Shown here: positions 506 through 60,913 of the stretch, in pieces
Numbering within the stretch: position 1 is the stretch's first letter
Layout: the number at the start of each line of letters is the position of its first letter
IMG/VR virus record: IMGVR_UViG_3300030385_002649
Coordinates: 1-64,000 of that record
Strand: one strand, 5' to 3'
Length of the DNA stretch: 64,000 nucleotides
Notes under the pieces: model-generated
The model's database searches: none
What the model was told of the DNA's origin: nothing
Seen by the model: only the letters and a program-made list of their open reading frames with translations
Made by a program: the position numbers and the translations under genes

Positions 506-828
506 TCGAGCCTAAGGAAGGAAACTGCTATAGGGTTAAGATTGCGTACAATCTAAAGGAAGGCAGCACAAACTGTCCTCCCCTTCACAACTATGAAGGC
601 CCTGCTTATTGTCAGAATGTAGCCGTTGGAGGGTTCATCTGTTTGCTGTTCCTCATCATGCATGAGGCCAGCCAAGTGGTTCGCGCGCATATCCTCACTC
701 AAGAAGGCAGCGTCATTATCGAAGACCTCGGCCCTGGCGTTCCATTTCTATTAAACACTCAACAAGGAGTTGATGCGGAAGCCTTCGGCGGTTATCAGCA
801 TCAACCAGCCTACACAGGCAAGGAATAA
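496..828 (+). CDS. Hypothetical protein
   Basis: GTG start after GGAGG, overlapping the upstream stop. Confidence 0.7.
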   Translation: MQVIEPKEGNCYRVKIAYNLKEGSTNCPPLHNYEGPAYCQNVAVGGFICLLFLIMHEASQVVRAHILTQEGSVIIEDLGPGVPFLLNTQQGVDAEAFGGYQHQPAYTGKE

Positions 829-829
829 C

Positions 830-1162
830 ATGAAGAAATCAGTCAAGCTTGAGGACATGATCGGCAAGGACCTGAAAATCCTAGTCCAAGCCAGGACCTG
901 GAACATGAAGGAGAAGAAAAACGACTTCTCGAGAAAGATCTTTGTCGGAACGCTCACAACAATTCGTCAAAGTTCGCTCGTCATCGAACCCTGGTTCGAA
1001 GTCTTGGAAGTGAAGGATGGCCGTATCGTCTCTCATAAGGACACCGACTCGAAGTGTGGTAAGTACATCATGCACAGTGGGACGACTAAGGAGATGCTCC
1101 AAGTCGATGAGCTCGACTACTCCGGAGGCCCTTGGGTCGACGGCAAGCCCAAGCGATCATAA
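830..1162 (+). CDS. Hypothetical protein
   Basis: ATG at 830, just after the upstream stop, AAGGA RBS. Confidence 0.7.
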   Translation: MKKSVKLEDMIGKDLKILVQARTWNMKEKKNDFSRKIFVGTLTTIRQSSLVIEPWFEVLEVKDGRIVSHKDTDSKCGKYIMHSGTTKEMLQVDELDYSGGPWVDGKPKRS

Positions 1163-1200
1163 GGTTAGAAGCCGGGGTGGGAAACTACCCCGGCTTACCT
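1162..1200 (+). terminator. GC-rich hairpin with GAAA loop (possible terminator or processing site)
   Basis: AAGCCGGGGTGG-GAAA-CTACCCCGGCTT directly after the stop; no clear U-tract. Confidence 0.45.
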
Positions 1201-1204
1201 TATC

Positions 1205-1447
1205 ATGAGATACTTACCATGGAGCATCTGCGAAAACGACCCATCGTTGGTCATAGACGCAGGAGGTTGTGTCGCTATCGACCTCTCAGTCTGGGGCGCG
1301 CTTGGAAAAGGGCACGACGCTAAAGAAGTGGTTGCGTTCATCGTAGAACGAGCCAATCGAGAACATGTCACAGACGAAGAACAACGTCTAAAGGACGAGT
1401 TTCAAAAGGAGGAGGTTGATGAAGATCTTCCAACAGAGATTTTGTGA
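1205..1447 (+). CDS. Hypothetical protein
   Basis: ORF track, operon-like packing. Confidence 0.6.
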   Translation: MRYLPWSICENDPSLVIDAGGCVAIDLSVWGALGKGHDAKEVVAFIVERANREHVTDEEQRLKDEFQKEEVDEDLPTEIL

Positions 1448-1715
1448 GTTGAAAGCGCTAGACGCGCCAGACTGGGTGAAAAGAGGAGCTTACCTTAATC
1501 TTCTCCATCACCTTCCAATTGGCGAAGACTGGCTAGAGTGCAAAGACCGTTTTGGGCTTTGGATTCTGCTTGAAACCGTTGGAGTCTCCTTGAGCGAGGA
1601 AGAAGTTGAAATCTTCGTCCGAGAACTGAGTGTCGGCGTCGAACACATCGACCAAATCCTGAGGACAAGAGGCCACGCTAAACTGTGGCAAGAAACGGAC
1701 AAGTCATGGGAGTAG
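1419..1715 (+). CDS. Hypothetical protein
   Basis: ATG after GGAGG, overlapping the upstream gene. Confidence 0.65.
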   Translation: MKIFQQRFCELKALDAPDWVKRGAYLNLLHHLPIGEDWLECKDRFGLWILLETVGVSLSEEEVEIFVRELSVGVEHIDQILRTRGHAKLWQETDKSWE

Positions 1716-1842
1716 AGACTAGACCCAAGATGATCATTCTTGGTGACTTCCGATATGTGTGATGCTGCGATCCTAGTGGTGTCTCATTATTTTGCAAGTG
1801 GGACTCACGGAAGCTACGGCGCTACAACTTACTGGAGATAAG

Positions 1843-2757
1843 ATGAGAAACTTCGTCAGAAAAAACACAATCTTCCTAACCCTAGCAGGCTCAAGGATGT
1901 ACGGCACCAGCACGCCAGAATCGGACACTGACATCCGAGGTGTCTGCGTTCCACCAAAAAACGTCGTGCTAGGCTTCGCCAACAAGTTCGAACAACAAAT
2001 GATTCCTGACGAGGAAGACTCAATCATCTACGGGCTAAAGAAGTTCATGGCCTTGGCCGCTGAGTGTAACCCTAACATATTGGAATTGTTGTTCGCACCT
2101 GAGTCAGCGATCATAACTTCAACACCAACATGGGAAGCTCTGATCGAACACCGTGAAATGTTTATCACCGCTGCGGCTTACCCCAAGTTCAGCGGTTACG
2201 CGCTTAGTCAGCTAAAGAGAATTAGGTCTCATAGGGCCTGGTTGCTTAGTCCTCCCGCCAAGAAACCAACTCGTGAAGAGTACGGGCTGACAGACCAGCC
2301 AAGTAGCGGGCTGACCTTGGGGACGGACATGCTGGAACCAGAGACTCTCAAGAGGATCAAATCTGAGCGTCAGTTCAAAACCGCTTTGCGAGCTTGGAAT
2401 CAGTATCAAGGTTGGAAAAAGGACCGCAACCCTAAACGGGCCGTCCTTGAGGCTAGCTTCGGCTATGACACCAAGCATGCCATGCACCTTGTCCGTCTCC
2501 TAAGAATGGGCGAGGAGATTCTCACTCAGGGCAAGGTGATCGTCGAGCGACCCGATGCTGAAGAACTGCTCGACATCCGTCGTGGGAAATGGACCTATGA
2601 CCAACTAATGGAAAACGTTGAGCCGATGAAGAATCGGTTGGATAAAATTTTCGAAACCAAGTCTTACTCAATTCCTGATAGGGCTGACATCAACGCACTC
2701 TCTGACCTGTGTGCGGAACTTCACGAGAGGTTCTGGCACGAAAAGGAAACAAAATGA
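1843..2757 (+). CDS. Predicted nucleotidyltransferase (PF10127/RlaP-like, Pol-beta superfamily)
   Basis: LAGSRMYGTSTPESDTDIRGV (GS...DxD) motif, CNPNILELLF, KHAMHLVRLL; GGAG RBS before ATG 1843. Confidence 0.85.
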   Translation: MRNFVRKNTIFLTLAGSRMYGTSTPESDTDIRGVCVPPKNVVLGFANKFEQQMIPDEEDSIIYGLKKFMALAAECNPNILELLFAPESAIITSTPTWEALIEHREMFITAAAYPKFSGYALSQLKRIRSHRAWLLSPPAKKPTREEYGLTDQPSSGLTLGTDMLEPETLKRIKSERQFKTALRAWNQYQGWKKDRNPKRAVLEASFGYDTKHAMHLVRLLRMGEEILTQGKVIVERPDAEELLDIRRGKWTYDQLMENVEPMKNRLDKIFETKSYSIPDRADINALSDLCAELHERFWHEKETK

Positions 2758-3071: not shown

Positions 3072-3081
3072 GACTAAAGCA

Positions 3082-4328: not shown

Positions 4329-4936
4329 AAATGATAAAACTCGGAACTTTTCAATACCGAGAGCAGGCTTGGCAAAATGGCAACTTTACCATCTGTCACC
4401 GAGGTTTGAAAAGTCTCAAATTCGACCTTGACAAGAATTTCGCTTACGACGTGAGAATCTATAACACGAAGCCTAGAGGTGAAAGCCAAGTGGTGCTGAT
4501 GGTTCTCCGTTCAGACCCGTATTGGGACTCAGGTCAGGGTTCCAATGGGTCCTTCTGGAAACGGCCTGATTCTAAAATCAACAGATGGTATCGATTCGAC
4601 GCTCATTATATCCGTGATATGTTGAAGAAGATGTTCGGGTTGGATGCTTGGGATCCGTGTGAACTTTACGTGAAAGTGAAGAAGCTTGAAGAACCAGACC
4701 CTAAGTTCACTAAAGAGGAACTAAGTGCTGCGATGTTTGTGATCTCTGTGAGACTTAAGAACATCCACCCAACCTTCGCCCATGTCACTCATAGTGATGA
4801 GGAGATCAAAATCCACTTCACGGACGGTACGCCGATGGAATCTGGTGAATTCGCTCATAACAGCAAAACGCGAAACTTGTTGGAAAAGCTTGCTGGTCAT
4901 CTTAAGCTTGCAAGACGCAAAACTTTCAGAATATGA
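4325..4936 (+). CDS. Hypothetical protein
   Basis: 203-aa ORF, translationally coupled. Confidence 0.7.
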   Translation: MKMIKLGTFQYREQAWQNGNFTICHRGLKSLKFDLDKNFAYDVRIYNTKPRGESQVVLMVLRSDPYWDSGQGSNGSFWKRPDSKINRWYRFDAHYIRDMLKKMFGLDAWDPCELYVKVKKLEEPDPKFTKEELSAAMFVISVRLKNIHPTFAHVTHSDEEIKIHFTDGTPMESGEFAHNSKTRNLLEKLAGHLKLARRKTFRI

Positions 4937-5578: not shown

Positions 5579-5651
5579 GGGCTTGTAGCTCAGGGGTTAG
5601 AGCGCGACTCTTATAAGGTTGATGTCGATGGTTCGATTCCATCCTGGCCCA
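5579..5651 (+). tRNA. tRNA-Ile (anticodon TAT); CCA not encoded
   Basis: Cloverleaf: acceptor GGGCTTG/CTGGCCC, D-arm GCTC/GAGC, anticodon loop CT-TAT-AA, T-arm GATGG-TTCGATT-CCATC. Confidence 0.85.
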
Positions 5652-5654
5652 CTT

Positions 5655-5737
5655 GATCGAATGGCGGAATTTGGCAGACGCGCATGTTTCAAACACATGT
5701 TCCATTAGGAGTGAGGGTTCGAGTCCCTCTTCGATCA
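5655..5737 (+). tRNA. tRNA-Leu (anticodon CAA); CCA not encoded
   Basis: Acceptor GATCGAA/TTCGATC, anticodon arm CATGT-TTCAAAC-ACATG, long variable arm, GAGGG-TTCGAGT-CCCTC. Confidence 0.92.
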
Positions 5738-5752
5738 TGAAAATAATTTTCG

Positions 5753-5834
5753 GGACCTGTGGTGGAATTGGCATACACACAACACTTAAAATGTTGCGCC
5801 GCAAGGCTTGCGGGTTCGAGTCCCGCCAGGTTCA
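5753..5834 (+). tRNA. tRNA-Leu (anticodon TAA); CCA not encoded
   Basis: Acceptor GGACCTG/CAGGTTC, anticodon arm CAACA-CTTAAAA-TGTTG, long variable arm, GCGGG-TTCGAGT-CCCGC. Confidence 0.92.
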
Positions 5835-5883: not shown

Positions 5884-6357
5884 ATGCCAGCGTGCAGAGG
5901 ATGTCAAGAAAATTTTCCTAATCGGGCAACGATAGGTGGAAAAACTTTTAGCTTAAGAAGTAGAAAATTCTGTTTGTCTTGTTCACCTTTTAAGAAAATT
6001 AGAACAAGGAAAGAACGAAAACTAACACCCAAAACTTGGATTTGTTTTAATTGTAAAAAAGAACGAACTGAAAAAACAAGAAATATAGTCTGTGGAACAT
6101 GTAGATCACAGATTAGAAGAGCAAAATCTAGAAGCCAAGCAATTGACATAATGGGTGGAAATTGCGCCCGATGTGGGTACGATAAATGCTATGATGCTTT
6201 AGATTTTCATCATATAGGAGAGAAGCTCTTCGCATTGGCAGCGAACTGGCATCGTTCATGGAAGTCTATAGAAGAAGAAATTAAAAAATGTGAATTGCTA
6301 TGCGCGAATTGTCATCGTGAAGAGCACGCCCAAACAATTTTTAACAACAACCGATAG
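5884..6357 (+). CDS. HNH endonuclease with N-terminal Zn-ribbons (free-standing homing endonuclease-like)
   Basis: CARCGY...ALDFHH...CELLCANCHREEH; visibly AT-rich relative to flanks; adjacent to the tRNA cluster. Confidence 0.85.
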   Translation: MPACRGCQENFPNRATIGGKTFSLRSRKFCLSCSPFKKIRTRKERKLTPKTWICFNCKKERTEKTRNIVCGTCRSQIRRAKSRSQAIDIMGGNCARCGYDKCYDALDFHHIGEKLFALAANWHRSWKSIEEEIKKCELLCANCHREEHAQTIFNNNR

Positions 6358-7422: not shown

Positions 7423-8364
7423 ATGAAATCTGAAGTGAAGACGATGACGAAGACGGTGGCGGGTGAGAGTGATCCGCGCAAGAAACTGCTCGAACGCGCT
7501 ATTAGCCAAGTGGCGGATCAGAAGGCTTTGTTGGAAGCGGATCCTGTTGCGGTTCGTCAAATTCAGGCTGCACAATTGGCGCAGCAAGCTGCCAAGAGTC
7601 GCTTTGATGCTGACGCTCTTTTGGTTAGGGCTGAGAAGGCAGCGGAGGAAGCTGAGCGTTTTCGCCTTGAGCAGATCGAAACCAAGATCGCAGCCGAAAT
7701 TGAGCATCGAGAGAAGCTCATAGAAACCGAGCAACGGTTGGCCGATGAAATGCGCCAAGAGAAGCTCAATGAGGAGAGGCGCACCCTTGAGAATAAGTAC
7801 AAGGAGGGCGAGTTTAGGGAGGCTGCTCTAACCTCTGAACGCCGCGCCGATGAGTTTGCTGAGTGCAAGGCGCGCGAGTTGGGGCTGGACGGGAAAGACG
7901 GAGACGCCGAAAATACCGAAAATACCGAAAGCGGTCCGCTCAGCAGTGAGGAGATTGGCGCTCTCCAATTGATCGCGTTAAGCCCTGAAGGCGCTTGCGA
8001 GCAGTACGCCAGGGTCAAGCTGAACACTATGATCAGCGTTATGGCTAAGATCAACCGTCAATTGGCACGTGCTGTCGCTGATAAGACGAAGATCGCCATC
8101 GATAAGACGCTGGTCGAGCCGGACGAGGAGGCTGATACTCTTTGTCTGATGAACGACACGGTCCGAGACGAGATCTTGGATAGTTATCGTTCGAAGGGTT
8201 GGAATGTAGAAATTATGACTGGTCACCTGGATCATACAATCTACGTATTTGAGCCTTCGGAAATGGGGAAGGCTGATAAGGACGTCGTGAAGGCAGCAGC
8301 TTTGCCACTTGGCGACGTTTTTGATCAGCCAGAGGACGATGAAGTCCTCGAATTCGGAATCTAA
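7423..8364 (+). CDS. Coiled-coil protein between the two Ubl genes
   Basis: Long E/K/R/A-rich helical region; AGAGGA RBS before ATG 7423. Confidence 0.75.
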   Translation: MKSEVKTMTKTVAGESDPRKKLLERAISQVADQKALLEADPVAVRQIQAAQLAQQAAKSRFDADALLVRAEKAAEEAERFRLEQIETKIAAEIEHREKLIETEQRLADEMRQEKLNEERRTLENKYKEGEFREAALTSERRADEFAECKARELGLDGKDGDAENTENTESGPLSSEEIGALQLIALSPEGACEQYARVKLNTMISVMAKINRQLARAVADKTKIAIDKTLVEPDEEADTLCLMNDTVRDEILDSYRSKGWNVEIMTGHLDHTIYVFEPSEMGKADKDVVKAAALPLGDVFDQPEDDEVLEFGI

Positions 8365-8365
8365 A

Positions 8366-8393
8366 ACACAACACACAACACACAACACACAAC
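8366..8393 (+). repeat. 7-bp tandem repeat (ACACAAC)x4
   Basis: Directly visible, intergenic, followed by hairpin 8401-8431. Confidence 0.95.
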
Positions 8394-8479
8394 AACTCAT
8401 TGTCCTCCCCCGCATGGTGTGAGGGAGGACATGGTTCGAACCGCACTTTTAAGTGCACATTTTTTGGAGAAAATTTCTT

Positions 8480-8779
8480 ATGTCGATTCTTAACAGCTTC
8501 TCAAGCAACAACGCCAACAACGCCAACAACGCCAGCATTGGCTCTTTCACCTTCACCATTCAGTATGGTACGGAGAAGGTTCACGTCGACGTCCGTCCGG
8601 ACGATCCCACCAGCCCCGAGTCGCTCGATGCAGCGCTGAAGGTCTACGCTGGTGCCCTCGGTTACGACTTCTCGCGGCCTGTGACCTGGCGTCGCGGTAG
8701 TGAGAACGTCGAGGCTACGACTCGCCCGCAGGCGGGTGAGACGTACCAAGCTGCGATGTCGCACGAGCAGAAGGGCTAA
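8480..8779 (+). CDS. Ubiquitin-like (beta-grasp) protein, copy 2
   Basis: 99 aa, near-identical to 7021..7305, same C-terminal ...HEQKG. Confidence 0.75.
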   Translation: MSILNSFSSNNANNANNASIGSFTFTIQYGTEKVHVDVRPDDPTSPESLDAALKVYAGALGYDFSRPVTWRRGSENVEATTRPQAGETYQAAMSHEQKG

Positions 8780-8801
8780 ACAACCCTTCTAGTTCAAGAG
8801 C

Positions 8802-8842
8802 GGGGGACGACGGGGTTAATTCCTCGTCGTCCCCCTTCTTTT
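8802..8842 (+). terminator. Rho-independent terminator after Ubl copy 2
   Basis: GGGGGACGACG...CGTCGTCCCCC followed by TTCTTTT. Confidence 0.7.
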
Positions 8843-8986
8843 AATGTTATCAAGTCACAAGATCGAGGTTGCCTTGAAGTTGATCGTGACATCATTTATA
8901 GCATTTAATACCTAGATGGGCGATAATTCAACCTCGTCGCCCTTTAAGGCGCTGACGCATTCAAATTCAACAGTCAGGAGACTACA

Positions 8987-10501: not shown

Positions 10502-10510
10502 GGATAACCA

Positions 10511-11962: not shown

Positions 11963-11971
11963 GAGAATACT

Positions 11972-12718
11972 ATGAAAATCGACCACGCAATCATTATCGG
12001 AGCCGGTGGTACTGGCTCACACCTCATCGAACCCCTCGTCCGACTGCTGCATTATCATGAGGATGGCACCAAGTCAATCACTGTTATCGATGGTGACCAG
12101 TACGAGGACTCCAACTCGACCCGCCAACTGTTCAGCAAAGAACTGATGGGGGTCAACAAGGCCGAGGCCCAGGGTCGCAAGATTGACTTCGCTGAGCTTC
12201 GGATCGTCCCAGAGTACGTCAACGACCTCAAGATGCGACGCGTCATGAACGAGATCGGAGCCGCTGAAGACGACATGATCCTTCTGATCCTTGCGGTGGA
12301 CAACCATGCCACCCGCAGCGCGGTCATGAAGATGTTGACGAGCGATGAATACCAGAACTTCGCTGTCCTATCACCGGGCAACGATTTCAGCCACGGCCAA
12401 GTGGTGTGTTGGGCTCGCATCAATGGGGAGGACAAGACTCAGCACCCGTTCGAGAGATACCCGCTCCTTGAATTCCCCGAGGACAACATTCCTGGGTTGG
12501 GTTGCGCGGAGGAAGCTGTTAGCACTCCTCAGTTGATCATGGCCAACGCTCTGGCAGCGGTCTCGACCAATCTCTACGTGTCTAACATCTTGGATAACAA
12601 GCCGATCCCTGATGAGATCCACTTCAACGTGTATAGCCTCAAGATTGTCCCGTCCGAGGGCACTGAGGTCATTCTCGCCTTAGAAACTGGCGAAACCTCC
12701 GAAGTCCTAGCTGGATGA
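11972..12718 (+). CDS. ThiF/E1-family Ubl-activating enzyme
   Basis: IIGAGGTG, DGDQYEDSNSTRQ, NKAEA, AVDNHATR, putative catalytic Cys in GLGCAEE, QLIMAN. Confidence 0.9.
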   Translation: MKIDHAIIIGAGGTGSHLIEPLVRLLHYHEDGTKSITVIDGDQYEDSNSTRQLFSKELMGVNKAEAQGRKIDFAELRIVPEYVNDLKMRRVMNEIGAAEDDMILLILAVDNHATRSAVMKMLTSDEYQNFAVLSPGNDFSHGQVVCWARINGEDKTQHPFERYPLLEFPEDNIPGLGCAEEAVSTPQLIMANALAAVSTNLYVSNILDNKPIPDEIHFNVYSLKIVPSEGTEVILALETGETSEVLAG

Positions 12719-12918
12719 CTGAGGCTCAGTTTGCCTGCCAGGTGGCTGAAATCCTGGCGGGCATGGGGAGGGACGATCTGGACGACAACGGAGTCGTCCT
12801 TCCTTTTCGGGGCCTTTCTCGTCCTGCTGTCCAAATTGTGGACAATTTAGTTACGGTTGTCGTTCAAGATAACGGCGGACAACCACAAACCTTTCAACTC
12901 CACGCTAAAAAGCTCTAG
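12715..12918 (+). CDS. Hypothetical protein coupled to E1
   Basis: ATGA overlap with the E1 stop. Confidence 0.6.
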   Translation: MTEAQFACQVAEILAGMGRDDLDDNGVVLPFRGLSRPAVQIVDNLVTVVVQDNGGQPQTFQLHAKKL

Positions 12919-12926
12919 GAGGATTT

Positions 12927-14426: not shown

Positions 14427-14439
14427 GACTTAGCTTCCT

Positions 14440-14466
14440 AGTCCCGGGCAAGACTATAAACTGCCC
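14440..14466 (+). ncRNA. Putative H-type pseudoknot motif, copy 1
   Basis: AGTCC-CGGGCA-AGACT-ATAAAC-TGCCC; recurs at 23346 and 46442. Confidence 0.55.
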
Positions 14467-14481
14467 CTCGAAAGATAAATT

Positions 14482-15461: not shown

Positions 15462-15487
15462 GTTAGCCAAGTGGTGCGGGGGTCGTT

Positions 15488-18171: not shown

Positions 18172-18420
18172 CAATCAGGTGGATCCAGCCTCTACCTGTG
18201 AGAAGTGTGAAGGTTACACGGAAATCCCTAAGGCTTGGGTGTCGATCTATCCCCCGAGGATGTGCACTTGCCAGCCAAGTGGGGACAACGCATTGGTCGA
18301 CTGGGAAGCCAGAGCTAAGCGAGCCGAAAAAGAACTCAGAACAATGATCAGGGATCACGATGACTGCGGGTGTATGACTTGTCGATTCGCTGGCGTCTAC
18401 CTAAGAGAACTAACACCCAA

Positions 18421-21042: not shown

Positions 21043-21447
21043 ATGGAAGAACACATAATCCCGGTTGAAATTATCACTCATGGTCATTTGATCATGATCG
21101 GTGATAAGGACGACATTATCAAGAAGTTAGAAAAGACACCCGTTAGGGAGTGGGAACCTCATGTGAGGGTAGACGCGTCTTTTCGAAAAATGCTCATCAG
21201 CCAAATTAGGAGGCGTGAAGATGAAGAAGTGGATGTTGACAGCAGCAATACTGGGCCTGACAATCTCCCTAACGGGGTGCTTGGGCCAGACGAAGCAGCT
21301 AGTAGCAGTGAACAATCAGGGGATCGCCAGTTGGAACAGCCAAGTGGCGGGGATCTCGACGAAGACCCTGTGGTGGCAGAAGACGACAGTGGGAGTGAGC
21401 AAGGAGAACAACCCTTGGGAGAAGTTCGTACGGACTCAACCGGTTGA
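21043..21447 (+). CDS. Hypothetical protein; 3' half overlaps the lipoprotein gene in another frame
   Basis: TAATG coupling to the upstream ORF. Confidence 0.5.
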   Translation: MEEHIIPVEIITHGHLIMIGDKDDIIKKLEKTPVREWEPHVRVDASFRKMLISQIRRREDEEVDVDSSNTGPDNLPNGVLGPDEAASSSEQSGDRQLEQPSGGDLDEDPVVAEDDSGSEQGEQPLGEVRTDSTG

Positions 21448-24205: not shown

Positions 24206-24604
24206 TGAGGGCAATTCTTTGGCCTCTATCATTGACCGTGTTCTTTGGATCAATGATAGTCCTGATTATTTCTTTATTGTATGGTGCTAGTGACAACACG
24301 ATAGAGGCGATCACGCCGTTCGTTGCTGTCTCAGAAGCGACGGCCATTTTCTGTGGATTATCTTTCCTGGTTTATGAGGACGGACCGGAGAACAACGGGT
24401 AATGTGCATAATTTGCGTCGATTTCATGAAACAATCTATTACTGTCAATGAGGCACATGGTATTTTATCAGAGATGCAGTCCGATTTGGACAAAGAACAC
24501 CTATTAGAGATTGAGGAGATGCTTAAAGCCGAACAAGAACACGACGATACTTAACAATACCATCATCAAGCCAAGTGGGTGCTATAACCCACTAAGGAAG
24601 AAAA

Positions 24605-29015: not shown

Positions 29016-30098
29016 ATGGCTACTAAAGCACCACTATTGCCAGACATTATGGCATCCGACCTAACCAAAGTCGCAATTTTTCTAGGGGCTCAACCAGATC
29101 CTGACGGGCTGGCTTCCCAGCACATGATGGCCGAACTCATCAGGATCAAGAACCCATCAGTGATAATTGGAAAATTCCATCGAGGAGACTTCAGTCATCC
29201 CCAGAACTCCACCATGGTGCAACTGTTAGGAATGGACTCTATTCCCTACAGCGAGTTCAATAAGGATGACGGTTGGTCTACTATCATTTCATGCGATGGA
29301 CCGCCGAGCGTGTGCCCAAGCTATCGGACTGAAAGCGGCGGGACTAAGACTGTAATTCCTGATTTCGTAATTGACCACCATGAGCAGAAGGGGCCCAAGC
29401 CAAGTGGTGGGGCCGACGTTCGCCCAATCGGGTCTTGCTCATCGATAATGTGGGAATACGCCATGGAGTCTGGTTACGACTTCGGCACAGAAGAGGGAGT
29501 AAAGCTGGCGACAGCACTCGGCGTCGGAATCAACACTGACACCCGGTTTGGAGGGGAAGAATCCTGTTCTCCCCTTGACTATGAGGCCCTAGCTTATTGC
29601 CAGATTAACAAGGATGATAAGCTTTACCGCGACATTCTTAATTATCCTAAGCCTGAGTACTTCATGGACTTGATGGTGGATGGGTGGAAGCATAAAGTTC
29701 CTGAAGGTAACGTTCTTGTTACAGGAATTGGGACTCTTAACCCGGCTCGTGTCTGGGTCGTACCGGCTCTGGCCGAAGAGTATCTTAAAATGTCCGGGGT
29801 CGATACGACCGTGGTTTTCGCCATCATTGAAGGGCCGGAAGGCAACTATATCAAGATTAGCGTCCGCTCGAACCGATCATCCCTTAACGTGGACACCTTC
29901 ACTAGACAAGCTTTTGGCTCTGGAGGCGGCAAGCGTGGCGCTGGAGCAGCGACTGTTAGTGTTCCCCCTCTGCTTCAGTGTTCTGAGGCAAGCCAAAGAG
30001 ATAAGTTCTATGAGGCTGTCCGAGAAATGATCATCCACAAGACGCTTCAAACTGCCAATGACGGGGCTAGGTCTAAGAAGGAAGAAGCAGCAGAATGA
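29016..30098 (+). CDS. DHH/DHHA1-family phosphoesterase (NrnA-like)
   Basis: QPDPDGLAS, IISCDG, VIDHH, GINTDT, ISVRS, GSGGGKRGAGAA. Confidence 0.85.
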   Translation: MATKAPLLPDIMASDLTKVAIFLGAQPDPDGLASQHMMAELIRIKNPSVIIGKFHRGDFSHPQNSTMVQLLGMDSIPYSEFNKDDGWSTIISCDGPPSVCPSYRTESGGTKTVIPDFVIDHHEQKGPKPSGGADVRPIGSCSSIMWEYAMESGYDFGTEEGVKLATALGVGINTDTRFGGEESCSPLDYEALAYCQINKDDKLYRDILNYPKPEYFMDLMVDGWKHKVPEGNVLVTGIGTLNPARVWVVPALAEEYLKMSGVDTTVVFAIIEGPEGNYIKISVRSNRSSLNVDTFTRQAFGSGGGKRGAGAATVSVPPLLQCSEASQRDKFYEAVREMIIHKTLQTANDGARSKKEEAAE

Positions 30099-36351: not shown

Positions 36352-36750
36352 ATGAGCCAGGAGACTGGTGGAAACCCGGGCGAGGTAAATGATCTGAGCC
36401 AAGTGGTGGCCGACATCCGAAAGGGCGTCAATAAACTGAATATGATCACCTCTGGCTTAAACGCTTATTCTGGTAAGTGTGGAACATTCAAAGAAGCCGA
36501 GGGCGGATTTCTCGTAATCTACGAAGTCGATTCAGAGACAATAGAAATCAACGTTATCGAAGTTGAAGTGACCGGTGAAGAAAACCACTGGGTAGTTCGG
36601 TGGGGCAGGCACTTACTTGCGGTTTGTCAGAACTATCACGAGTTAGTTGGGGCTCTAGTCGGAGATTATGCTTTAAAACTTGTGAAAGTGGCTAAGAAAT
36701 TCGACGAGAAAGGCTGGCCTAGAATAGCCTTAAGAGAGGAGACAAAGTGA
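36352..36750 (+). CDS. Hypothetical protein
   Basis: AAGGAG RBS. Confidence 0.7.
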   Translation: MSQETGGNPGEVNDLSQVVADIRKGVNKLNMITSGLNAYSGKCGTFKEAEGGFLVIYEVDSETIEINVIEVEVTGEENHWVVRWGRHLLAVCQNYHELVGALVGDYALKLVKVAKKFDEKGWPRIALREETK

Positions 36751-40868: not shown

Positions 40869-41018
40869 TGAGACGAAGACTAATGAGGATGACAAGCCAA
40901 GTGGTGGCGGCGAGGTTCAATACGAACGCATCGCTAACATCTGGACCCTTATCCCAATCAGTAAGTAAGCAGAGACGATGATCTCTGAGAAACATACAAA
41001 GGATTGGTACCGGGATAA

Positions 41019-49337: not shown

Positions 49338-49733
49338 GTGAAACATAACCTCTTCAAATTCACTTTGCGAGCGGAATTCGACCCGGCCATTGCAGCTGGA
49401 GAGCAAATAGAAAGTTATGTTTCACGCATTACACGCAGCCTTAGTTTCGACCAGGCTGATCTAGAAGACATTTACACAATCCCAATCAAGGGGCAAGAAA
49501 ATTTAGCGTTATCTTACGTTAAACTTCTCGTTCGTGATTATGGTGTTGGCCAAGTGGGTGTCGATATTGTGAACGGCTGGATGTATAGGTTATTCGTCGG
49601 TTCACTTAAATCCAGTCTGAACGTTAAAATTCAGGCTGTAGTTGCTCATCCCCTAGTGTACGTTGCTACCGGTGCACTCATAGAATGGGATTGGGAGCAC
49701 AACAAGCCTATAATTTACGAACTCGAACTTTAA
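49338..49733 (+). CDS. Hypothetical protein
   Basis: ORF track. Confidence 0.55.
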   Translation: MKHNLFKFTLRAEFDPAIAAGEQIESYVSRITRSLSFDQADLEDIYTIPIKGQENLALSYVKLLVRDYGVGQVGVDIVNGWMYRLFVGSLKSSLNVKIQAVVAHPLVYVATGALIEWDWEHNKPIIYELEL

Positions 49734-50264: not shown

Positions 50265-51680
50265 ATGGGAACTGGCGAACGTTTAATGGACGCCCGCTGC
50301 CGATTGGTGACGAGACTGCCATGGTATGGAACGATGGCACAACAATTCACCTGGGTATCCGACCCAAGCGTGAAGACGATGGGCGTGTCGATTGTCCAAG
50401 GTGGCAGGGTCATTTGCTATTACGCACCTGACTTCTGCGACTCGCTGACAATCATGGAAATGGCTGCCGTCGTCCGGCACGAGATCGAGCACATTGTCCG
50501 GCTCCATATTCTCCGTGTTGGAAGTCGAAAGCACAAAATGTGGAACATCGCGGGTGACATGGTCATCAACGGTAAGAAATCCAACCCCCAAATTCCCGAG
50601 CTACCAGGCGGGAAGTTCGAGGGCACCTACTATCCCGAAGAATGGGATTGGGGGATGACGACCGAAGAAGTCTACCACAAGCTCGACAACATTAAGGTCA
50701 TCGCCCACATTAAGGGTGGTTGTCCAAAATGCGGAAAGGGAGAACGTCCCCAGCCCGAGCCAAGTGGGGGCGATCAAGAGGGCAATCAAGAACCCAAAAA
50801 TGGCGATGAGAAGCAAGATGGGTCCGAAGGCGGCGACGAGCCAGGCGAAAATGCCGAAAATGGTGAATCCGGCGATGGTGGTCCTGGTGGCGGATGCGGT
50901 ACCCAAGGCCCTCCAGAGGATTGCCCAAGCTGTGGTGAACAGGCAGGTGGCAGTGGCGAAAGTCGCACTGAGATTTGGGGCAACCCGAACGGAACCGAGG
51001 TCATCGAGATCGAAATTGGCGACGGAATGGATAACCACGACCCCTGGCGTCAATCGACGGCATCAGAGGAAGAGGCCCGCCAACGCGTCAAGGAAATGTG
51101 TCGGAGAGCCAGCCAAACCGCTGGGGCAACTCCTGGCCACATGATTGACGCCATCTCCGCCCTTGATGATCCAGTCATTAGCTGGCGATACGAGCTAAAG
51201 CAAGTCTTCGGTCGCGTCCTAGGTGGGCGTCGTAGGACTTGGGCACGTGTCAACCGACGAGACCCTCGCTTCGGCACAAAGGGTAAGTCGAGCCACGCTA
51301 GGACACCGATCACCCTCGCGGTCGATACTTCAGGATCCATGTGCAAGAAACGACTAGAACAAGCTTTCGGCGAAATCGAAGGGGCCGCCCAGAAAACGAA
51401 GACGACTCTGGTGCAATTTGATCACGGCTACCAGTGCCACTCTCGCTACCGCAAGGGTGATTGGGCTAGGATCGAGATTAAGGGCCGTGGCGGCACGTCA
51501 TTCGTCAAGGCTTTTCAGGCTATGGAGACGCAACGATTGGTCGGGAAACTCAACATTATCATCACTGATGGTGAAGCTCCCTGGCCTCCGGAACCAGACT
51601 GGCCCATCCTCTGGGTCATTCTCAACTCGAAAGACAGGATCAAGCCACCGTTTGGTCGCGTGATTTACATCGACAAGTAA
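50265..51680 (+). CDS. VWA-domain metallopeptidase-like protein (DUF2201 type), MoxR partner
   Basis: VRHEIEH, WNIAGDMVIN, AVDTSGSM (MIDAS), GRGGTSF; AAAGGAGG RBS. Confidence 0.85.
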   Translation: MGTGERLMDARCRLVTRLPWYGTMAQQFTWVSDPSVKTMGVSIVQGGRVICYYAPDFCDSLTIMEMAAVVRHEIEHIVRLHILRVGSRKHKMWNIAGDMVINGKKSNPQIPELPGGKFEGTYYPEEWDWGMTTEEVYHKLDNIKVIAHIKGGCPKCGKGERPQPEPSGGDQEGNQEPKNGDEKQDGSEGGDEPGENAENGESGDGGPGGGCGTQGPPEDCPSCGEQAGGSGESRTEIWGNPNGTEVIEIEIGDGMDNHDPWRQSTASEEEARQRVKEMCRRASQTAGATPGHMIDAISALDDPVISWRYELKQVFGRVLGGRRRTWARVNRRDPRFGTKGKSSHARTPITLAVDTSGSMCKKRLEQAFGEIEGAAQKTKTTLVQFDHGYQCHSRYRKGDWARIEIKGRGGTSFVKAFQAMETQRLVGKLNIIITDGEAPWPPEPDWPILWVILNSKDRIKPPFGRVIYIDK

Positions 51681-56172: not shown

Positions 56173-56575
56173 CGTAGAGCGGCTGAAGCGACAAATGAAT
56201 TCGATTCAGCGTCACGTTAATTTAGGGCACATGAGTATAGTCGATGCACAACGATACATGTCTGATTATCGTCGACGTCTTAGGGACGAAGGAGACGAGG
56301 ACAAACGGCGTCGTGCTGATCTCAATAAAAGAAAGAGGAATAAATGATAGTTAATTATGGCGGCAAACCATTTATCATTAAAGCAACCCTAGAAGAAGTG
56401 ATTAGGGGTTATTTGATTTATCTTGAAGAACAATGTGAACTTGACGAGGATTGTGATTCCGCTGAAGCCAACATTCGTCAAGTTCACATTGGGCCGAACG
56501 ACAGCGGAACCTTCAAGGAAATCAGTGAAGTGAAAGTCACGATCAACTGTTCGACGGAGAATTAGCCAAGTGGGG

Positions 56576-58182: not shown

Positions 58183-58290
58183 TGTTAAGAGCATGGTTTA
58201 GTTTTCTAGTTTGGTATGATAATGAGGCGTACCACAATAACGCTTACGCGGACATGGAGTATTAATGAATAAACGAGAACGATTAATCTA

Positions 58291-58632: not shown

Positions 58633-58885
58633 AGAAATGATCACTGATGGTGAATACGTATGATTGTGTCAGTTAATGACTGGAATCTTCATCTAAGATT
58701 TTATGAAATTGAGGAGGAAAAATTCACAGAAATGATGAGCCTTCTTAGAAATGACAGAAGAAAATTTTTCAACAAAAACACGAAGATGGCTAAAGTTCAC
58801 TGTGATTCTGATGCGGATTGGCACCCCCCCCCAATCTACACTAACCGTGATGAGGAATGGGACGAATTTGAAGAGGAGTGGAACA

Positions 58886-59143: not shown

Positions 59144-59225
59144 CAATTCAATGATCAAGTGACATTTTAACGGTTATGTCGCTTGTATTTTACAAATCAA
59201 CCGTCAATTTGAAAGAGGTGTTTTT

Positions 59226-59612
59226 ATGGCTCGTACGCCAAACCAGTGGAATTTTGCAAGTACTCGTATTCTTAACCAACTGATCGGTGATTTCGGTCAA
59301 GATGAGCTTGCGCTGAGACTTGGTGTGTCTTATACCACTGTTCGCAACTGGACTAAGGGTTCGATTCCTTCGGATCGTTTCCAAATCGCTATGGCCAACT
59401 TGACGCAACCCGTTAAGAAGACCAATATCGGTTCGGTTCCGGCCAGGATTGCGAATTACTTGAAGGCCACTAAGGTGACCCGTGAGGACTTTGCTACTCT
59501 CGTCGGCAAGTCGGAAACGACCGTGACCAATTGGATCAACAGGAAGAGCAATCCGCGCTCCTTGAAGAACCTGAACTTGGTTCTTCAGAACCCCCGTCCT
59601 TTTAGCGAGTAG
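59226..59612 (+). CDS. Tandem double XRE-type helix-turn-helix regulator
   Basis: QDELALRLGVSYTTVRNW and TREDFATLVGKSETTVTNW; GAGG RBS. Confidence 0.85.
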   Translation: MARTPNQWNFASTRILNQLIGDFGQDELALRLGVSYTTVRNWTKGSIPSDRFQIAMANLTQPVKKTNIGSVPARIANYLKATKVTREDFATLVGKSETTVTNWINRKSNPRSLKNLNLVLQNPRPFSE

Positions 59613-59623
59613 TCCCCCAACCA

Positions 59624-59670
59624 ACGACGATACCCCGCACACACTTTATTGTGACGCGGGGTATCGTCGT
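59624..59670 (+). terminator. 15-bp stem hairpin after the HTH gene
   Basis: ACGACGATACCCCGC...GCGGGGTATCGTCGT. Confidence 0.6.
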
Positions 59671-59694
59671 ATTTGAAAGGTCGGAGGCTGCGGC

Positions 59695-60105
59695 GTGCCA
59701 AAAACCGAAGAAGTTAATCCAAAGAATTTTCTAAGTATAGGATGGGAAGAAAAACGTGGAACACTGACGAGGGTAACGACAATTGAATCGGCAAGGATTA
59801 GAAGTCTAGCTTCAATTGTTAAAAACAACATTATCAAAGAAGAAGCTTATGGCGATGTACGGCCATGGTTCTTGTTTGATTGCACCGCCCCAGGATGGAA
59901 CGGTGCTAAGTTTTGGCTATTATCGGACGGGGAAGAATGGCACGGAGTAGACGAATACGTCGCAGGTCACTTCCGTGTAACAAACAACCTTCGCCCGAAA
60001 AATTCAGTCAACTTACGCCACTTATCAGCATTCGACAAAGGAATGCTCCAAAAAATGATAAGAAGTTTCATAAGGGCAAAAAGTGAAAAGAAAAGTATGG
60101 TTTAG
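59695..60105 (+). CDS. Hypothetical protein
   Basis: ORF track. Confidence 0.6.
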   Translation: MPKTEEVNPKNFLSIGWEEKRGTLTRVTTIESARIRSLASIVKNNIIKEEAYGDVRPWFLFDCTAPGWNGAKFWLLSDGEEWHGVDEYVAGHFRVTNNLRPKNSVNLRHLSAFDKGMLQKMIRSFIRAKSEKKSMV

Positions 60106-60271
60106 CAAAACGATATGCGTTCTAAATTTTGTAAATGAAGATGACGCTAAAGACATAAAATACTTCTACAATTACAAGCTTAGGAAAAACAACAGCCGTT
60201 ATGTTGACAGGCGAATTGAATTGCTCTTAGACGCAATAATATTACACAAAGACATACAGGACAAATGAATC

Positions 60272-60913
60272 ATGTTGACAAAGCTGCAAGTAAGATGTCC
60301 TGACAAACCGATCAGGATCGCACAAGACCAACTAGAAATGATGAACCAATTAGGAGGGTACATCGCAACGGCCAAATACGACGGATGGAGGACAATCGTC
60401 GACTGGACAGGAAGCCAAGTGGGGTTCTTCTCCCGCAGAGGAATGTCCAAAGGAGGGCCAACTGAAATCCCAGTAAGCGAAAAGATCGCCGAAGACACCA
60501 AGACATTCCTGATTGACAACAAAATCCCAGCTGACACACGGTTAGACGCCGAGTGGCTCGGACGACGTCATGACGGGAAAGAACAACTGTTCATCTTCGG
60601 AGTTCAATTCTACAACGGATCCTGGGTTGGAAGTGACCCGGAAAGGATCCGTTGGGAGATAGTAAAAGGGCTCTCATACAACTCCGATCTAGTCCAACTA
60701 GCTGAAAACTCTGAGTCCTCTTATGACGAGTTTTTTCAAAAGTTGAAAAATGATGACTTGAAGCGCAATGAGGACTCGTGGATCCTTGAGGGCATTGTCC
60801 TTAAGCACGAGTCTAGTTCTCTTCTTGGCAACATTATGGAGAGTAAGAAAAACGGCATGTGGTTCAAAACCAAATGGCGTGACGGAGCTACAGGAAAGGT
60901 AGAGACATTTTGA
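60272..60913 (+). CDS. Stand-alone ATP-dependent ligase adenylation domain
   Basis: KYDG (motif I), FFSRRG, DAEW (III), EGIVLK (IV), WFKTK (V); only 213 aa, no OB domain. Confidence 0.75.
   Translation: MLTKLQVRCPDKPIRIAQDQLEMMNQLGGYIATAKYDGWRTIVDWTGSQVGFFSRRGMSKGGPTEIPVSEKIAEDTKTFLIDNKIPADTRLDAEWLGRRHDGKEQLFIFGVQFYNGSWVGSDPERIRWEIVKGLSYNSDLVQLAENSESSYDEFFQKLKNDDLKRNEDSWILEGIVLKHESSSLLGNIMESKKNGMWFKTKWRDGATGKVETF

What the first reader, a model, noticed from the sequence alone, without database searches (positions are those of the whole stretch)
670..60422. Strand-polarised decamer AGCCAAGTGG scattered every few kb across the window
Seen: exact + strand copies start at 670, 4484, 7504, 15465, 18273, 21338, 24569, 29398, 36397, 40895, 50758, 56564 and 60413. 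That is 13 copies; uniform-composition expectation is about 64000/4^10, roughly 0.06 per strand. GGCCAAGTGG variants occur near 12375 and 49548. I found no exact reverse-strand copy. Copies fall in two reading frames (SQV in six genes; QPSG/KPSG/EPSG in others) and in intergenic DNA, so a peptide motif does not explain them. The extension AGCCAAGTGGNG holds in 11 of 13. Inference: a DNA-level, orientation-dependent signal. Candidates are a Chi-like site protecting against or recruiting RecBCD/AddAB (several copies end GTGGTGG), a KOPS-like translocase or packaging signal, or the binding site of a phage genome-organising protein.
Basis: seen in the sequence. Interest (0 to 1): 0.75.

Follow-up and report, generated by a model that had tools for sequence, protein, structure and literature searches.

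The report
One-strand decamer array in jumbo phage
An uncultivated 371-kb marine jumbo phage carries 28 exact copies of AGCCAAGTGG, all on one strand and evenly spaced, confined to a 91-kb block of fast-evolving accessory genes; it is a real DNA-level signal that is neither a peptide motif nor the block's promoter, and its reader is still unknown.

Summary
The window is the first 64 kb of a complete 370,804-bp IMG/VR/TARA jumbo myovirus. AGCCAAGTGG is the most frequent 10-mer in the genome: 28 + strand copies, all in one arc (340,190 through the contig junction to 60,413), and a single - strand copy elsewhere. A shuffle that keeps every protein gives 1.3 copies on average. The flanks are not conserved and near-variants are few. 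Spacing is far more even than chance, and density falls away from a non-coding hub at 345-348 kb.

The arc is compositionally distinct (GC 0.485 against 0.444) and made almost entirely of orphan genes. Copies lie in tiny spacers, on stop codons and inside genes in two frames. Only 4 of 66 sizeable upstream gaps carry it, so it is not the arc's promoter. Two complete relatives lack the word; their own high-GC arcs carry ordinary degenerate promoters.

My best reading, at about 0.3, is a set of orientation-dependent binding sites that control transcription elongation, as stoperators do in mycobacteriophage L5. The main rival, at about 0.2, is an end-associated Chi-like array. The host, the genome ends and the transcripts could not be tested.

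The parts
670..679 (+). decamer copy
   Evidence: It is 93 nt upstream of the next + gene. One set of gene calls places it in a 108-aa ORF (S-Q-V frame) and the other calls it intergenic.
4484..4493 (+). decamer copy inside a 203-aa gene
   Evidence: It is 159 nt from the gene start and 443 nt from its end, in the S-Q-V frame.
7504..7513 (+). decamer copy inside a 313-aa gene
   Evidence: It is 81 nt from the start and 851 nt from the end, in the S-Q-V frame.
12395..12404 (+). one-mismatch variant GGCCAAGTGG
   Evidence: It lies within the longest gap in this part of the array (7504 to 15465).
15465..15474 (+). decamer copy filling a 26-nt intercistronic spacer
   Evidence: It is 3 nt after a stop codon and 13 nt before the next start codon.
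18273..18282 (+). decamer copy inside an 89-aa gene
   Evidence: It is in the x-P-S-G frame.
21338..21347 (+). decamer copy inside a 134-aa gene
   Evidence: It is in the x-P-S-G frame (QPSGG in an acidic low-complexity stretch), 100 nt from the gene's end.
24569..24578 (+). decamer copy in a 50-nt spacer
   Evidence: It is 14 nt after a stop and 26 nt before a start, and is directly followed by a GTGCTATAAC box that resembles an extended -10 element.
29398..29407 (+). decamer copy deep inside a 360-aa gene
   Evidence: It is 382 nt from the start and 691 nt from the end, encoding KPSGG.
36397..36406 (+). decamer copy inside a 132-aa gene
   Evidence: It is 45 nt from the start, in the S-Q-V frame.
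40895..40904 (+). decamer copy 26 nt after a stop codon
   Evidence: It is 114 nt before the next start. A doubtful 36-aa ORF call overlaps it.
49548..49557 (+). one-mismatch variant GGCCAAGTGG
50758..50767 (+). decamer copy inside the DUF2201/VWA gene
   Evidence: It encodes EPSGG in a low-complexity linker that is longer in this phage and absent from 10 homologues.
56564..56573 (+). decamer copy overlapping a TAG stop codon
   Evidence: It sits at the end of a 73-aa gene and is followed by a convergent - strand gene.
60413..60422 (+). last decamer copy of the array, inside a 213-aa DNA-ligase-like gene
   Evidence: It is 141 nt from the start, in the S-Q-V frame. Genes with homologues in the relatives resume at about 63.6 kb.

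Best explanation
Shown: AGCCAAGTGG is a selected, strand-specific DNA word. It is not a peptide motif, a repeat-element remnant or the arc's promoter. It is spread at regular intervals through one 91-kb hypervariable, leftward-to-rightward transcribed block of accessory genes in a jumbo myovirus. The array starts at a non-coding hub at about 345.6 kb, where two gene arcs diverge, and thins with distance from it.

Inferred, as the most likely mechanism: each copy is a high-affinity asymmetric binding site for a sequence-specific factor that acts on RNA polymerase travelling through the arc. The factor is probably a small phage-encoded DNA-binding protein. One version is an orientation-dependent roadblock that silences the arc as a block, as the L5 repressor does at its stoperators. 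The other version is a reloading point for an elongation or antitermination factor read on the non-template strand, as ops is for RfaH.

This reading accounts for four features. The copies need the exact word but are indifferent to gene boundaries and reading frame. They share the orientation of transcription. They are spaced so that no long stretch is free of a site. They are densest next to the hub from which arc transcription would start.

The general statement (a DNA-level, polar, non-promoter signal) I hold at about 0.85. The specific elongation-control mechanism I hold at about 0.3.
For: - Enrichment, polarity and regional restriction: 28 + copies against 0 - copies in the arc, and 1 copy in the other 280 kb. 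It is the top 10-mer of the genome. The protein-preserving shuffle gives a mean of 1.3.
- Exactness: 28 exact copies against 12 one-mismatch variants. All 10 positions matter, there is no flanking information upstream, and only a weak G/T preference for 3-5 nt downstream.
- DNA level, not peptide.
- Not the promoter: only 4 of 66 spacers of at least 45 nt upstream of + genes hold it. Other spacers hold TATAAT-like boxes. Copies fill a 26-nt spacer, overlap stop codons, or lie 400-900 nt from the next start. The right arc shows no excess of sigma-70-type sites.
- Co-orientation with transcription: 27 of 28 arc copies, and the lone copy at 171,333, are on the sense strand of the local genes.
- Even spacing: the minimum gap is 973 bp (P about 1e-4 in each half) and the gap CV is 0.46 against 0.90 for random placement. 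Spacing is also even when counted in genes.
- Density gradient from the hub.
- The neighbouring leftward arc uses a different, degenerate word resembling an extended -10 element (TGGTWTAG, 34 copies in 27 kb). The two arcs are therefore separately controlled modules.
- Precedent: L5 and cluster A phages have 20-30 asymmetric 13-14-bp sites, oriented with transcription, mostly not at promoters and some within genes. They block elongation only in one orientation (PMC9283540; PMC6550527).
- Small HTH proteins are encoded in the arc, for example window 59226-59612.
Against: - No reader protein has been identified. No NusG, sigma or RNAP homologue is detectable.
- No transcript data exist, so the direction of transcription is inferred from gene orientation alone.
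- Stoperators are known only in temperate actinophages. They are 13-14 bp and more degenerate, and they flip orientation between the two genome arms. Here only one arm carries sites, so tracking of transcription cannot be separated from a fixed DNA polarity.
- Copy 340190 lies in the leftward-transcribed arc, antisense to the local genes.
- ops elements occur once per operon in a leader, not every few kb.
- The density gradient and the raised GC of the arc are also what an end-associated recombination-hotspot array would give.
Confidence: 0.3

Rival explanations
1. Chi-like array tied to DNA ends. The word, or its complement, switches a host or phage helicase-nuclease that enters at a genome end from degradation to recombination. 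This would protect the first-entering end and promote circularisation or recombination-dependent replication. If packaging starts near the 345-348 kb hub and runs rightward by headfuls, the last-packaged and first-injected right ends, together with the terminal redundancy, would fall progressively across exactly this arc. The + strand words would then be met from their 3' side, as E. coli Chi is.
For: - Exactness, absolute polarity, clustering with a density gradient, even spacing, and placement wherever the word is tolerated.
- Direct precedent: phage LLS has 20 top-strand against 3 bottom-strand Chi sites concentrated near one end. Pseudomonas phage MD8 has 32 against 0. P1 has 50 (PMC12315714).
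- The phage has a T4-type TerL and an SbcC-like nuclease.
- The arc is GC-enriched and strain-variable, as a recombination-hot region could be.
- The relatives lack the word, as expected if it depends on the host or on carrying an anti-RecBCD function.
Against: - The unit is 10 nt, whereas known Chi sites are 5-8 nt. A 10-mer Chi would have to be massively over-represented in a host genome, and no such genome is known to me (from memory, not tested).
- The word does not resemble known Chi sequences.
- The phage encodes no RecB-type nuclease.
- TerL lies 175 kb from the hub, and the physical ends are unknown. The contig breaks sit at tandem repeats and SNP bubbles, not at termini.
- The densest stretch has lower, not higher, assembly depth.
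- The exact coincidence with the orphan arc and with its transcription direction would be an accident under this model.
Confidence: 0.2
2. Promoter for a phage-specific RNA polymerase or sigma-like factor, in the manner of T7 promoters or the T4 late promoter. It would drive a temporal class of genes restricted to this arc.
For: - Phage-specific promoters are the usual explanation for exact, co-oriented words in phage genomes.
- 15 of 27 copies lie within 150 nt upstream of a + gene start, against about 31% expected.
- There is G enrichment just downstream of the word.
- The relatives' high-GC arcs and this phage's left arc each have an arc-specific promoter class.
Against: - Only 4 of 66 sizeable upstream spacers carry it.
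- 14 copies are inside genes, and 7 of them are more than 300 nt from the gene's end.
- Some copies leave 13 nt or less to the next start, or overlap stop codons.
- There is no second promoter element and no AT-rich melting region.
- No RNAP or sigma gene was found by Pfam or PHROGs among the large proteins, or by six-frame search.
- The true promoter classes in the relatives are degenerate and strictly upstream of genes, unlike this word.
Confidence: 0.08
3. Sites of strand-specific DNA processing. These could be programmed single-strand nicks, as in T5, tf and phiKMV-like phages, or another replication or packaging enzyme site such as a priming or polar fork-barrier site.
For: - An exact asymmetric word confined to one strand, at about one copy per 1.5-5 kb.
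- The phage encodes several HNH nucleases, including a 1,309-aa protein with an N-terminal HNH domain.
- The hub has iteron-like repeats and sits at the minimum of cumulative GC skew.
- Depth is lower over the densest stretch.
Against: - Known nick systems are not confined to a quarter of the genome (from memory).
- The depth drop has a simpler explanation in strain heterogeneity.
- No read-level data are available.
- No link exists between any nuclease and the word.
Confidence: 0.1
4. RNA-level signal in arc transcripts. The word would be the recognition or cleavage site of an RNA-binding protein or endoribonuclease, as in the early-mRNA shut-off by T4 RegB, or a seed match for a small guide RNA.
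For: - 28 of 29 copies are on the sense strand.
- Exactness without flanking conservation resembles a base-pairing seed.
- The word forms a minimal CC-AAGU-GG hairpin.
- 11 copies lie within 32 nt after a stop codon.
Against: - No complementary stretch, even allowing G-U pairs, exists in any non-coding part of the genome apart from the sites' own opposite strand.
- Extended structure is present at only a few copies, and the closing positions do not covary.
- Rfam finds only tRNAs.
- There are no RNA data.
Confidence: 0.1

Closest known systems
Stoperators of mycobacteriophage L5 and cluster A phages (repressor gp71/Rep sites)
   Same: Both have tens of short asymmetric sites per genome with one orientation relative to transcription. 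Most are not at promoters. They lie in short intergenic spaces and sometimes within genes, at about one per 2-3 kb (PMC9283540, PMC6550527).
   Different: Here the word is 10 bp and essentially invariant, against a 13-14 bp word with variants. It is confined to one arm of a lytic-looking 371-kb myovirus. Half the copies are inside genes. No repressor homologue and no operator copy at a promoter has been identified. The orientation flip between arms that defines the L5 system cannot be seen.
Terminally clustered, co-oriented Chi sites in phages lacking anti-RecBCD (LLS, MD8, P1)
   Same: An exact word with near-absolute strand bias, clustered towards one part of the genome, at a density of about one per 1.5-3 kb and independent of gene context (PMC12315714).
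   Different: In those phages the word is the host's known 8-mer Chi and the cluster abuts a mapped DNA end. Here the word is a 10-mer unlike any known Chi, the host and the ends are unknown, and the array spans 91 kb.
ops element and RfaH (from memory)
   Same: An exact word of about 10-12 nt, read on the non-template strand, forming a tiny hairpin and acting on elongating RNA polymerase in long operons.
   Different: ops occurs once in an operon leader. No NusG paralogue is encoded by the phage.
Phage-specific promoters (T7-type; T4 late TATAAATA) (from memory)
   Same: Exact, co-oriented words that are few per genome.
   Different: Those lie upstream of genes at a fixed distance and come with a cognate polymerase or sigma factor. 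Neither condition holds here.
Localized single-strand interruptions of T5, tf and phiKMV-like phages (from memory)
   Same: A consensus confined to one strand, with sites a few kb apart.
   Different: Those are defined by physical nicks, which could not be examined here, and they are not restricted to one genome quarter.
DNA uptake sequences (DUS/USS) and KOPS (from memory)
   Same: Highly over-represented exact 8-12-mers, enriched in intergenic DNA, with frame preferences inside genes that look like tolerance-driven placement. KOPS are also polar.
   Different: DUS and USS are genome-wide in bacteria and not strand-polar. KOPS switch polarity at dif and point towards the region where they are densest, whereas this array has one polarity and points away from its densest end.

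Membership tests
Chi (RecBCD/AddAB hotspot) | Short exact word, strongly over-represented | tested here: met
   28 copies against about 0.1-1.3 expected.
Chi (RecBCD/AddAB hotspot) | Length of 5-8 nt, as in all characterised Chi sites | tested here: not met
   All 10 positions are constrained. 28 of the 32 arc copies of CCAAGTGG on the + strand are preceded by AG.
Chi (RecBCD/AddAB hotspot) | Same word over-represented and skewed in the host chromosome | not testable with these tools
   The host is unknown. The PurA probe found no informative cellular lineage.
Chi (RecBCD/AddAB hotspot) | Active orientation faces a DNA end at which the enzyme enters | tested here: inconclusive
   The array is polar and graded, but termini cannot be mapped from Logan contigs. 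The contig breaks are at repeats and SNP bubbles.
Stoperator system (cluster A actinophages) | About 20-30 asymmetric sites without dyad symmetry dispersed in the genome | tested here: met
   28 asymmetric copies, with no inverted partner.
Stoperator system (cluster A actinophages) | Site orientation follows the direction of transcription on both arms | tested here: inconclusive
   27 of 28 copies are co-oriented with local genes, but only one arm carries sites. Copy 340190 is antisense.
Stoperator system (cluster A actinophages) | Cognate monomeric HTH plus stoperator-domain repressor, and an operator copy in the early promoter | not tested
   No candidate was scanned specifically. Only faint HTH hits were seen, at window 59226-59612.
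Phage-specific promoter | Located upstream of genes at a constrained distance | tested here: not met
   Only 4 of 66 upstream spacers carry it, and 14 copies are inside genes.
Phage-specific promoter | Cognate phage RNAP or sigma factor encoded | tested here: not met
   PF00623, PF04542 and PF00940 gave no match. The PF00940 search lacked a positive control. The large proteins show no RNAP hit in Pfam or PHROGs.
ops/RfaH-type recruitment site | NusG paralogue present; a single site in the operon leader | tested here: not met
   PF02357 is absent from the phage, and the sites recur every 1-10 kb. A host paralogue cannot be tested.
T5/tf/phiKMV nick sites | Physical single-strand interruption at the consensus | not testable with these tools
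   Only assembled contigs of the runs are available.
KOPS/SRS translocase-guiding words | Polarity switches at a target site and density rises towards it | tested here: not met
   There is a single polarity, no mirrored - strand array, and the words point away from the dense end.
Dispersed repeat / MITE / tRNA-derived element | Conserved flanks or structure beyond the core | tested here: not met
   There is no information outside the 10-mer. Self-BLAST finds no repeat family. Rfam and ARAGORN find nothing at the sites.

The most novel reading that the evidence does not exclude
A lytic jumbo phage uses its own 10-nt, strand-specific word to govern a whole 91-kb hypervariable counter-defence/accessory arc. 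The word would be read by a so far unrecognised phage protein. That protein would either stop or license RNA polymerase in an orientation-dependent way, or act as a phage-specified Chi-like switch for end processing. Either case would be a new reader-word pair outside the actinophage stoperator family and the host-Chi paradigm.
Probability: 0.3. Interest if true: 0.8.

Novelty: new variant of a known kind. Interest (0 to 1): 0.6.

Why it matters
Jumbo phages keep their fastest-evolving genes (host takeover and counter-defence) in dedicated arcs, and how such arcs are controlled as units is largely unknown. This array is an unusually clean handle: one exact 10-mer, 28 copies, one strand, one arc. 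It can be used directly as bait for pull-down or EMSA, and it can be flipped or deleted in reporters.

If it is an elongation-control site, it extends stoperator-type regulation from small temperate actinophages to marine jumbo phages. If it is Chi-like, it would reveal both the phage's packaging geometry and an unknown host's recombination hotspot, which would give a sequence-based host link for an uncultivated virus.

The work also gives a practical lesson for annotation. Arc-specific words in this clade come in two kinds: degenerate promoters, and this exact non-promoter word.

Tried and rejected
- Peptide motif: rejected.
- Chance or composition: rejected.
- Repeat element, MITE or tRNA remnant: rejected. 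Flanks are not conserved, and self-BLAST, Rfam and ARAGORN find nothing at the sites.
- A resemblance recalled from memory to the tRNA D-arm / eukaryotic Pol III A-box consensus (TRGCNNAGTGG) was noted. No D-stem partner follows the word, and none of the phage tRNAs contains it, so I treat it as coincidence.
- Conserved extended hairpin: rejected. Only a few copies have long stems, and the closing positions do not covary.
- Main promoter of the arc: rejected.
- MotA-box-like activator site: no -10 element lies at a fixed distance.
- Link to intrinsic terminators: none is consistent.
- Phage-encoded guide RNA: no complementary locus exists.
- Conservation in relatives: the word is absent from five IMG/VR relatives, from about 475 kb around relatives' sheath genes, and from two complete genomes.
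- Nearer relatives (72-75% sheath identity) sit on metagenome contigs that could not be searched whole.
- Arc proteins retrieve only identical TARA copies or distant homologues.
- An 8-mer in relative G2 (GAAGCTCA, 11:0, ignoring gene orientation) looked analogous but is not a statistical outlier.
- Host identification through PurA failed.
- No RNA run was listed.
- DNA runs are held only as contigs, so read ends, termini and nicks could not be examined.
- Complex prediction, structure prediction and fold search were not used, because no candidate reader protein was singled out.

Full report
**1. What the sequence is**

The window is bases 1-64,000 of a single 370,804-bp contig. IMG/VR holds it as a complete virus. 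The contig ends overlap by 46 bp and sit in short tandem repeats. The map is therefore an assembly circle, and position 1 is arbitrary.

Identical copies occur on TARA Oceans scaffolds. The only sequencing runs that hold it are marine metagenomes.

It is a jumbo myovirus. It encodes a tail sheath, baseplate proteins, a tape measure, a T4-type large terminase interrupted by inteins, a DnaE-type polymerase, an SbcC-like nuclease and a UvrD-like helicase. It carries about 36 tRNA genes. No cultured relative exists at the DNA level, and even the polymerase is below 30% identical to any GenBank phage. The sheath has many environmental homologues at 55-75% identity on contigs of up to 400 kb.

**2. 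The observation**

Dinucleotide shuffles give 0.09.

Genome-wide there are 28 + copies and one - copy. Every + copy lies between 340,190 and 60,413 across the junction, an arc of about 91 kb. The other 280 kb hold only the - copy, at 171,333.

The decamer is the commonest 10-mer in the genome, ahead of all low-complexity words.

A shuffle that permutes synonymous codons within each gene, and so keeps every protein and each gene's codon usage, and that also shuffles spacers, yields on average 1.3 arc copies (maximum 5 in 300 trials).

**3. Anatomy of the word**

- Nothing upstream of the word is conserved. Downstream there is only a weak G/T preference for 3-5 nt.
- All ten positions count. Of the 32 arc copies of CCAAGTGG on the + strand, 28 are preceded by AG and 2 by GG.
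- One-mismatch variants number 12 on the arc's + strand and 1 on its - strand.
- The word can form a minimal CC-AAGU-GG hairpin. Long stems exist at only a few copies, and the positions that would extend the stem do not covary.

**4. Spacing**

- No two copies are closer than 973 bp. The probability of that under random placement is about 1e-4 in each half of the array.
- The coefficient of variation of the gaps is 0.46-0.47, against 0.90 for random placement (P = 0.003-0.004).
- Spacing is also even when counted in genes.
- Density falls with distance from about 345.6 kb. It is about one copy per 1.5 kb up to 365 kb, then one per 3-10 kb.

**5. The arc**

- GC rises abruptly at about 340 kb, from 0.43 to 0.50-0.52. 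It averages 0.485 in the arc and 0.444 elsewhere.
- Non-coding DNA makes up 18% of the arc and 8% of the rest.
- Genes in the arc are small and nearly all on the + strand.
- None of about 95 predicted genes at 330-371 kb has a homologue in either of two complete relatives. Only a handful at 0-60 kb do. Conserved genes resume at about 63.6 kb. The array coincides with a hypervariable accessory region.
- The annotatable genes are of the counter-defence or host-takeover kind. They include an E1/E2/JAB set, a T4-type RNA ligase, a Mom-like protein, a MoxR-type AAA protein with a VWA/DUF2201 partner, a DNA ligase, Cpn10, thioredoxin and a SpoU methylase.
- In Logan contigs of the source sample, the 20.5-kb contig carrying the densest part of the array has 0.60-0.65 of the word depth of the contig to its left. 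A 2.9-kb hub at 345.4-348.3 kb has about 1.6 times that contig's depth.
- The simplest reading of the depth step is that co-occurring strains share the hub and differ in their arcs.
- The hub is poorly coding. It has iteron-like CCTAATGTTAG repeats, an 850-bp G/T-rich block and a (GTGGTTGAGG)5 array. The minimum of cumulative GC skew lies there.

**6. Position relative to genes**

Independent database gene calls cover 27 of the 28 copies and were mapped.

- 11-13 copies are intergenic or overlap a stop codon.
- 14 copies are inside + strand genes. Of these, 9-10 are in the S-Q-V frame, 5-6 in the x-P-S-G frame, and none in the third frame.
- In my own gene set, all 9 S-Q-V tripeptides and 4 of 5 P-S-G tripeptides in arc genes are spelled by the decamer. 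Elsewhere the figures are 1 of 13 and 0 of 25.
- The copy in the DUF2201/VWA gene encodes EPSGG in a low-complexity linker. That linker is longer in this phage and is not shared by ten homologues.

The peptides are therefore by-products of the DNA word, and the word is placed where proteins tolerate it.

**7. Is it a promoter?**

Fifteen of 27 copies lie within 150 nt upstream of a + gene start, against about 31% expected. That is a two-fold enrichment.

However, of 66 spacers of at least 45 nt upstream of + genes in the arc, only 4 contain the word in their last 110 nt. Several others contain ordinary TATAAT-like boxes. One copy fills a 26-nt intercistronic spacer. Three overlap stop codons. 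Seven lie more than 300 nt from the end of the gene that contains them.

No second promoter element accompanies the word. Sigma-70-type matches are not in excess. No RNA polymerase, sigma factor or NusG homologue was found.

The adjoining leftward arc (about 320-346 kb) behaves differently. It carries about 34 copies of a degenerate TGGT[AT]TAG word that looks like an extended -10 element, each roughly 30 nt upstream of a conserved ribosome-binding site.

The relatives also differ:
- Relative G1 has a high-GC arc with about 39 co-oriented bipartite TTTACGG-N12-CYGCCACA promoters, 20-60 nt upstream of start codons.
- Relative G2 has a high-GC arc with GTGCTATAA(C) boxes on both strands that follow gene orientation.

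Arc-specific promoters in this clade are therefore degenerate and strictly upstream of genes. The decamer is neither. I reject the promoter reading as the main explanation and retain it at 0.08.

**8. Relatives**

The word is not enriched in five IMG/VR relatives. It is absent from about 475 kb around relatives' sheath genes. It is not matched by any comparable exact polar word in two complete genomes. A one-strand 8-mer in G2 was not a statistical outlier.

Nearer relatives could not be searched. Arc proteins retrieve only identical copies or distant homologues. The word is lineage-specific as far as it can be tested.

**9. Mechanism**

The shown facts call for a reader that has four properties. 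It needs the exact word. It distinguishes the two strands or directions. It acts throughout one transcription-co-oriented module. It benefits from regularly spaced sites that are densest near the module's start.

Two documented phage systems have this anatomy.

*(a) Stoperators.* L5 and cluster A mycobacteriophages carry 20-30 asymmetric 13-14-bp repressor sites. These are oriented with transcription, mostly away from promoters, and block elongation only in one orientation.

*(b) Terminally clustered Chi arrays.* These occur in phages that lack anti-RecBCD functions. LLS has 20 against 3, MD8 has 32 against 0, and the sites are concentrated near one DNA end.

I favour an elongation-control role, either as a stoperator-like roadblock or as an ops-like loading site. 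It needs no further coincidence: orientation, module boundaries and the gradient from the hub all follow from transcription. A 10-bp asymmetric site also suits a small DNA-binding protein.

The Chi-like model needs three things that could not be tested. The first is a fixed end or pac site at the hub. The second is rightward headful packaging that spreads the first-injected ends over the arc. The third is a helicase-nuclease that reads a 10-mer, longer than any known Chi. It nevertheless explains the gradient, the even spacing and possibly the raised GC, and it has the closest published pattern.

Strand-specific nicking or another DNA-processing site, and an RNA-level site, remain possible. 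No phage-encoded complementary RNA exists.

My weights are:
- elongation control 0.3
- Chi-like 0.2
- DNA processing 0.1
- RNA-level 0.1
- promoter 0.08
- something else for the remainder

**10. Novelty and verdict**

The literal word appears in the searchable literature only in unrelated primer lists. The feature is real, statistically extreme and cleanly defined, and it is not explained by any annotated function.

It resembles known kinds of polar DNA words but fails or cannot complete the membership test for each. I class it as a new variant of a known kind, with interest 0.6.

Noticed in passing
G000 about 320,000-346,000 (loci L015/L016), outside the window: There is a second arc of small orphan genes, transcribed leftward, with its own polarised word. 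TGGT[AT]TAG has 35 of its 48 - strand copies here and looks like an extended -10 promoter. It is usually followed about 30 nt later by a conserved ribosome-binding region, TGTAGGTGTGGnCATG.
   Followed up: partly
G000 345,400-348,360 (L016:13400-16360): This is a poorly coding hub between the two divergent arcs. It contains a C-rich block, a terminator-like hairpin that includes decamer copy 345650, iteron-like CCTAATGTTAG repeats (3 direct, 1 inverted) at about 347.2 kb, an 850-bp G/T-rich block and a (GTGGTTGAGG)x4.9 array. The minimum of cumulative GC skew is at 345.8 kb. It may be an origin or a control region.
   Followed up: partly
G000 343,000-348,900 in runs X1/X2: Assembly word depth steps from 285 to about 455 to 185 (X2), and from 58 to 34.9 (X1), across the hub. 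SNP bubbles occur at 345,364-345,454. This suggests co-occurring strains that share the hub but differ in their arcs.
   Followed up: no
window 8987-14426: This is a ubiquitin-like conjugation gene set. It comprises a weak Prok-E2-like protein (504 aa), a weak JAB-like protein (483 aa), a ThiF/E1-like protein (248 aa, window 11972-12718) and an unassigned 499-aa protein.
   Followed up: no
window 32218-33885 (- strand): A 555-aa protein with a Mom-family domain and a weak REase_MTES_1575 match. It is one of the few - strand genes inside the arc.
   Followed up: no
window 33937-35064; locus L136:734-1837: This is a phage-type adenylosuccinate synthase. In this phage it lies in the arc. In a relative with 74% sheath identity it lies 9 kb upstream of the sheath gene, beside a glutamine-synthetase-like gene, so the gene has moved between modules.
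   Followed up: partly
window 5579-5834; G000 348,611-348,686 and 350,222-350,293; G000 about 216,000-241,000: Five tRNA genes lie on the + strand within the arc, apart from the main cluster of about 31 on the - strand. The main cluster includes one tRNA with anticodon TCA (called tRNA-SeC by ARAGORN) and one with an apparent four-base anticodon. No sign of an altered genetic code was looked for or seen.
   Followed up: no
G000 165,747-169,439 (- strand): The large terminase gene (T4-type N-terminal domain) is interrupted by intein and LAGLIDADG domains, giving a 1,230-aa product.
   Followed up: no
relative G1 (loci L099-L116), 222,000-277,000: This arc has GC of 0.43-0.50 against 0.37 for the rest of the genome. 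It holds about 39 co-oriented bipartite promoters, TTTACGG-N12-CYGCCACA, 20-60 nt upstream of SD+ATG. Several are embedded in inverted repeats, which recalls the promoter-stem-loop cassettes of T4-type hyperplastic regions.
   Followed up: partly
relative G2 (loci L117-L135), 57,000-95,000: This arc has GC of about 0.50 against 0.41 elsewhere. GTGCTATAA(C) boxes lie on both strands and track gene orientation. The 8-mer GAAGCTCA occurs 11 times on one strand and never on the other, regardless of gene orientation, but it is not a statistical outlier.
   Followed up: partly
window 24569-24588: One decamer copy is directly abutted by GTGCTATAAC, the promoter-like box typical of relative G2's arc. 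This is the only such juxtaposition.
   Followed up: no
G000 315,338-319,267 (+ strand): A 1,309-aa protein with an N-terminal HNH nuclease domain and no other recognisable domain. Three small HNH genes also exist, at 276.4 kb, 235.3 kb and window 5884-6357.
   Followed up: no
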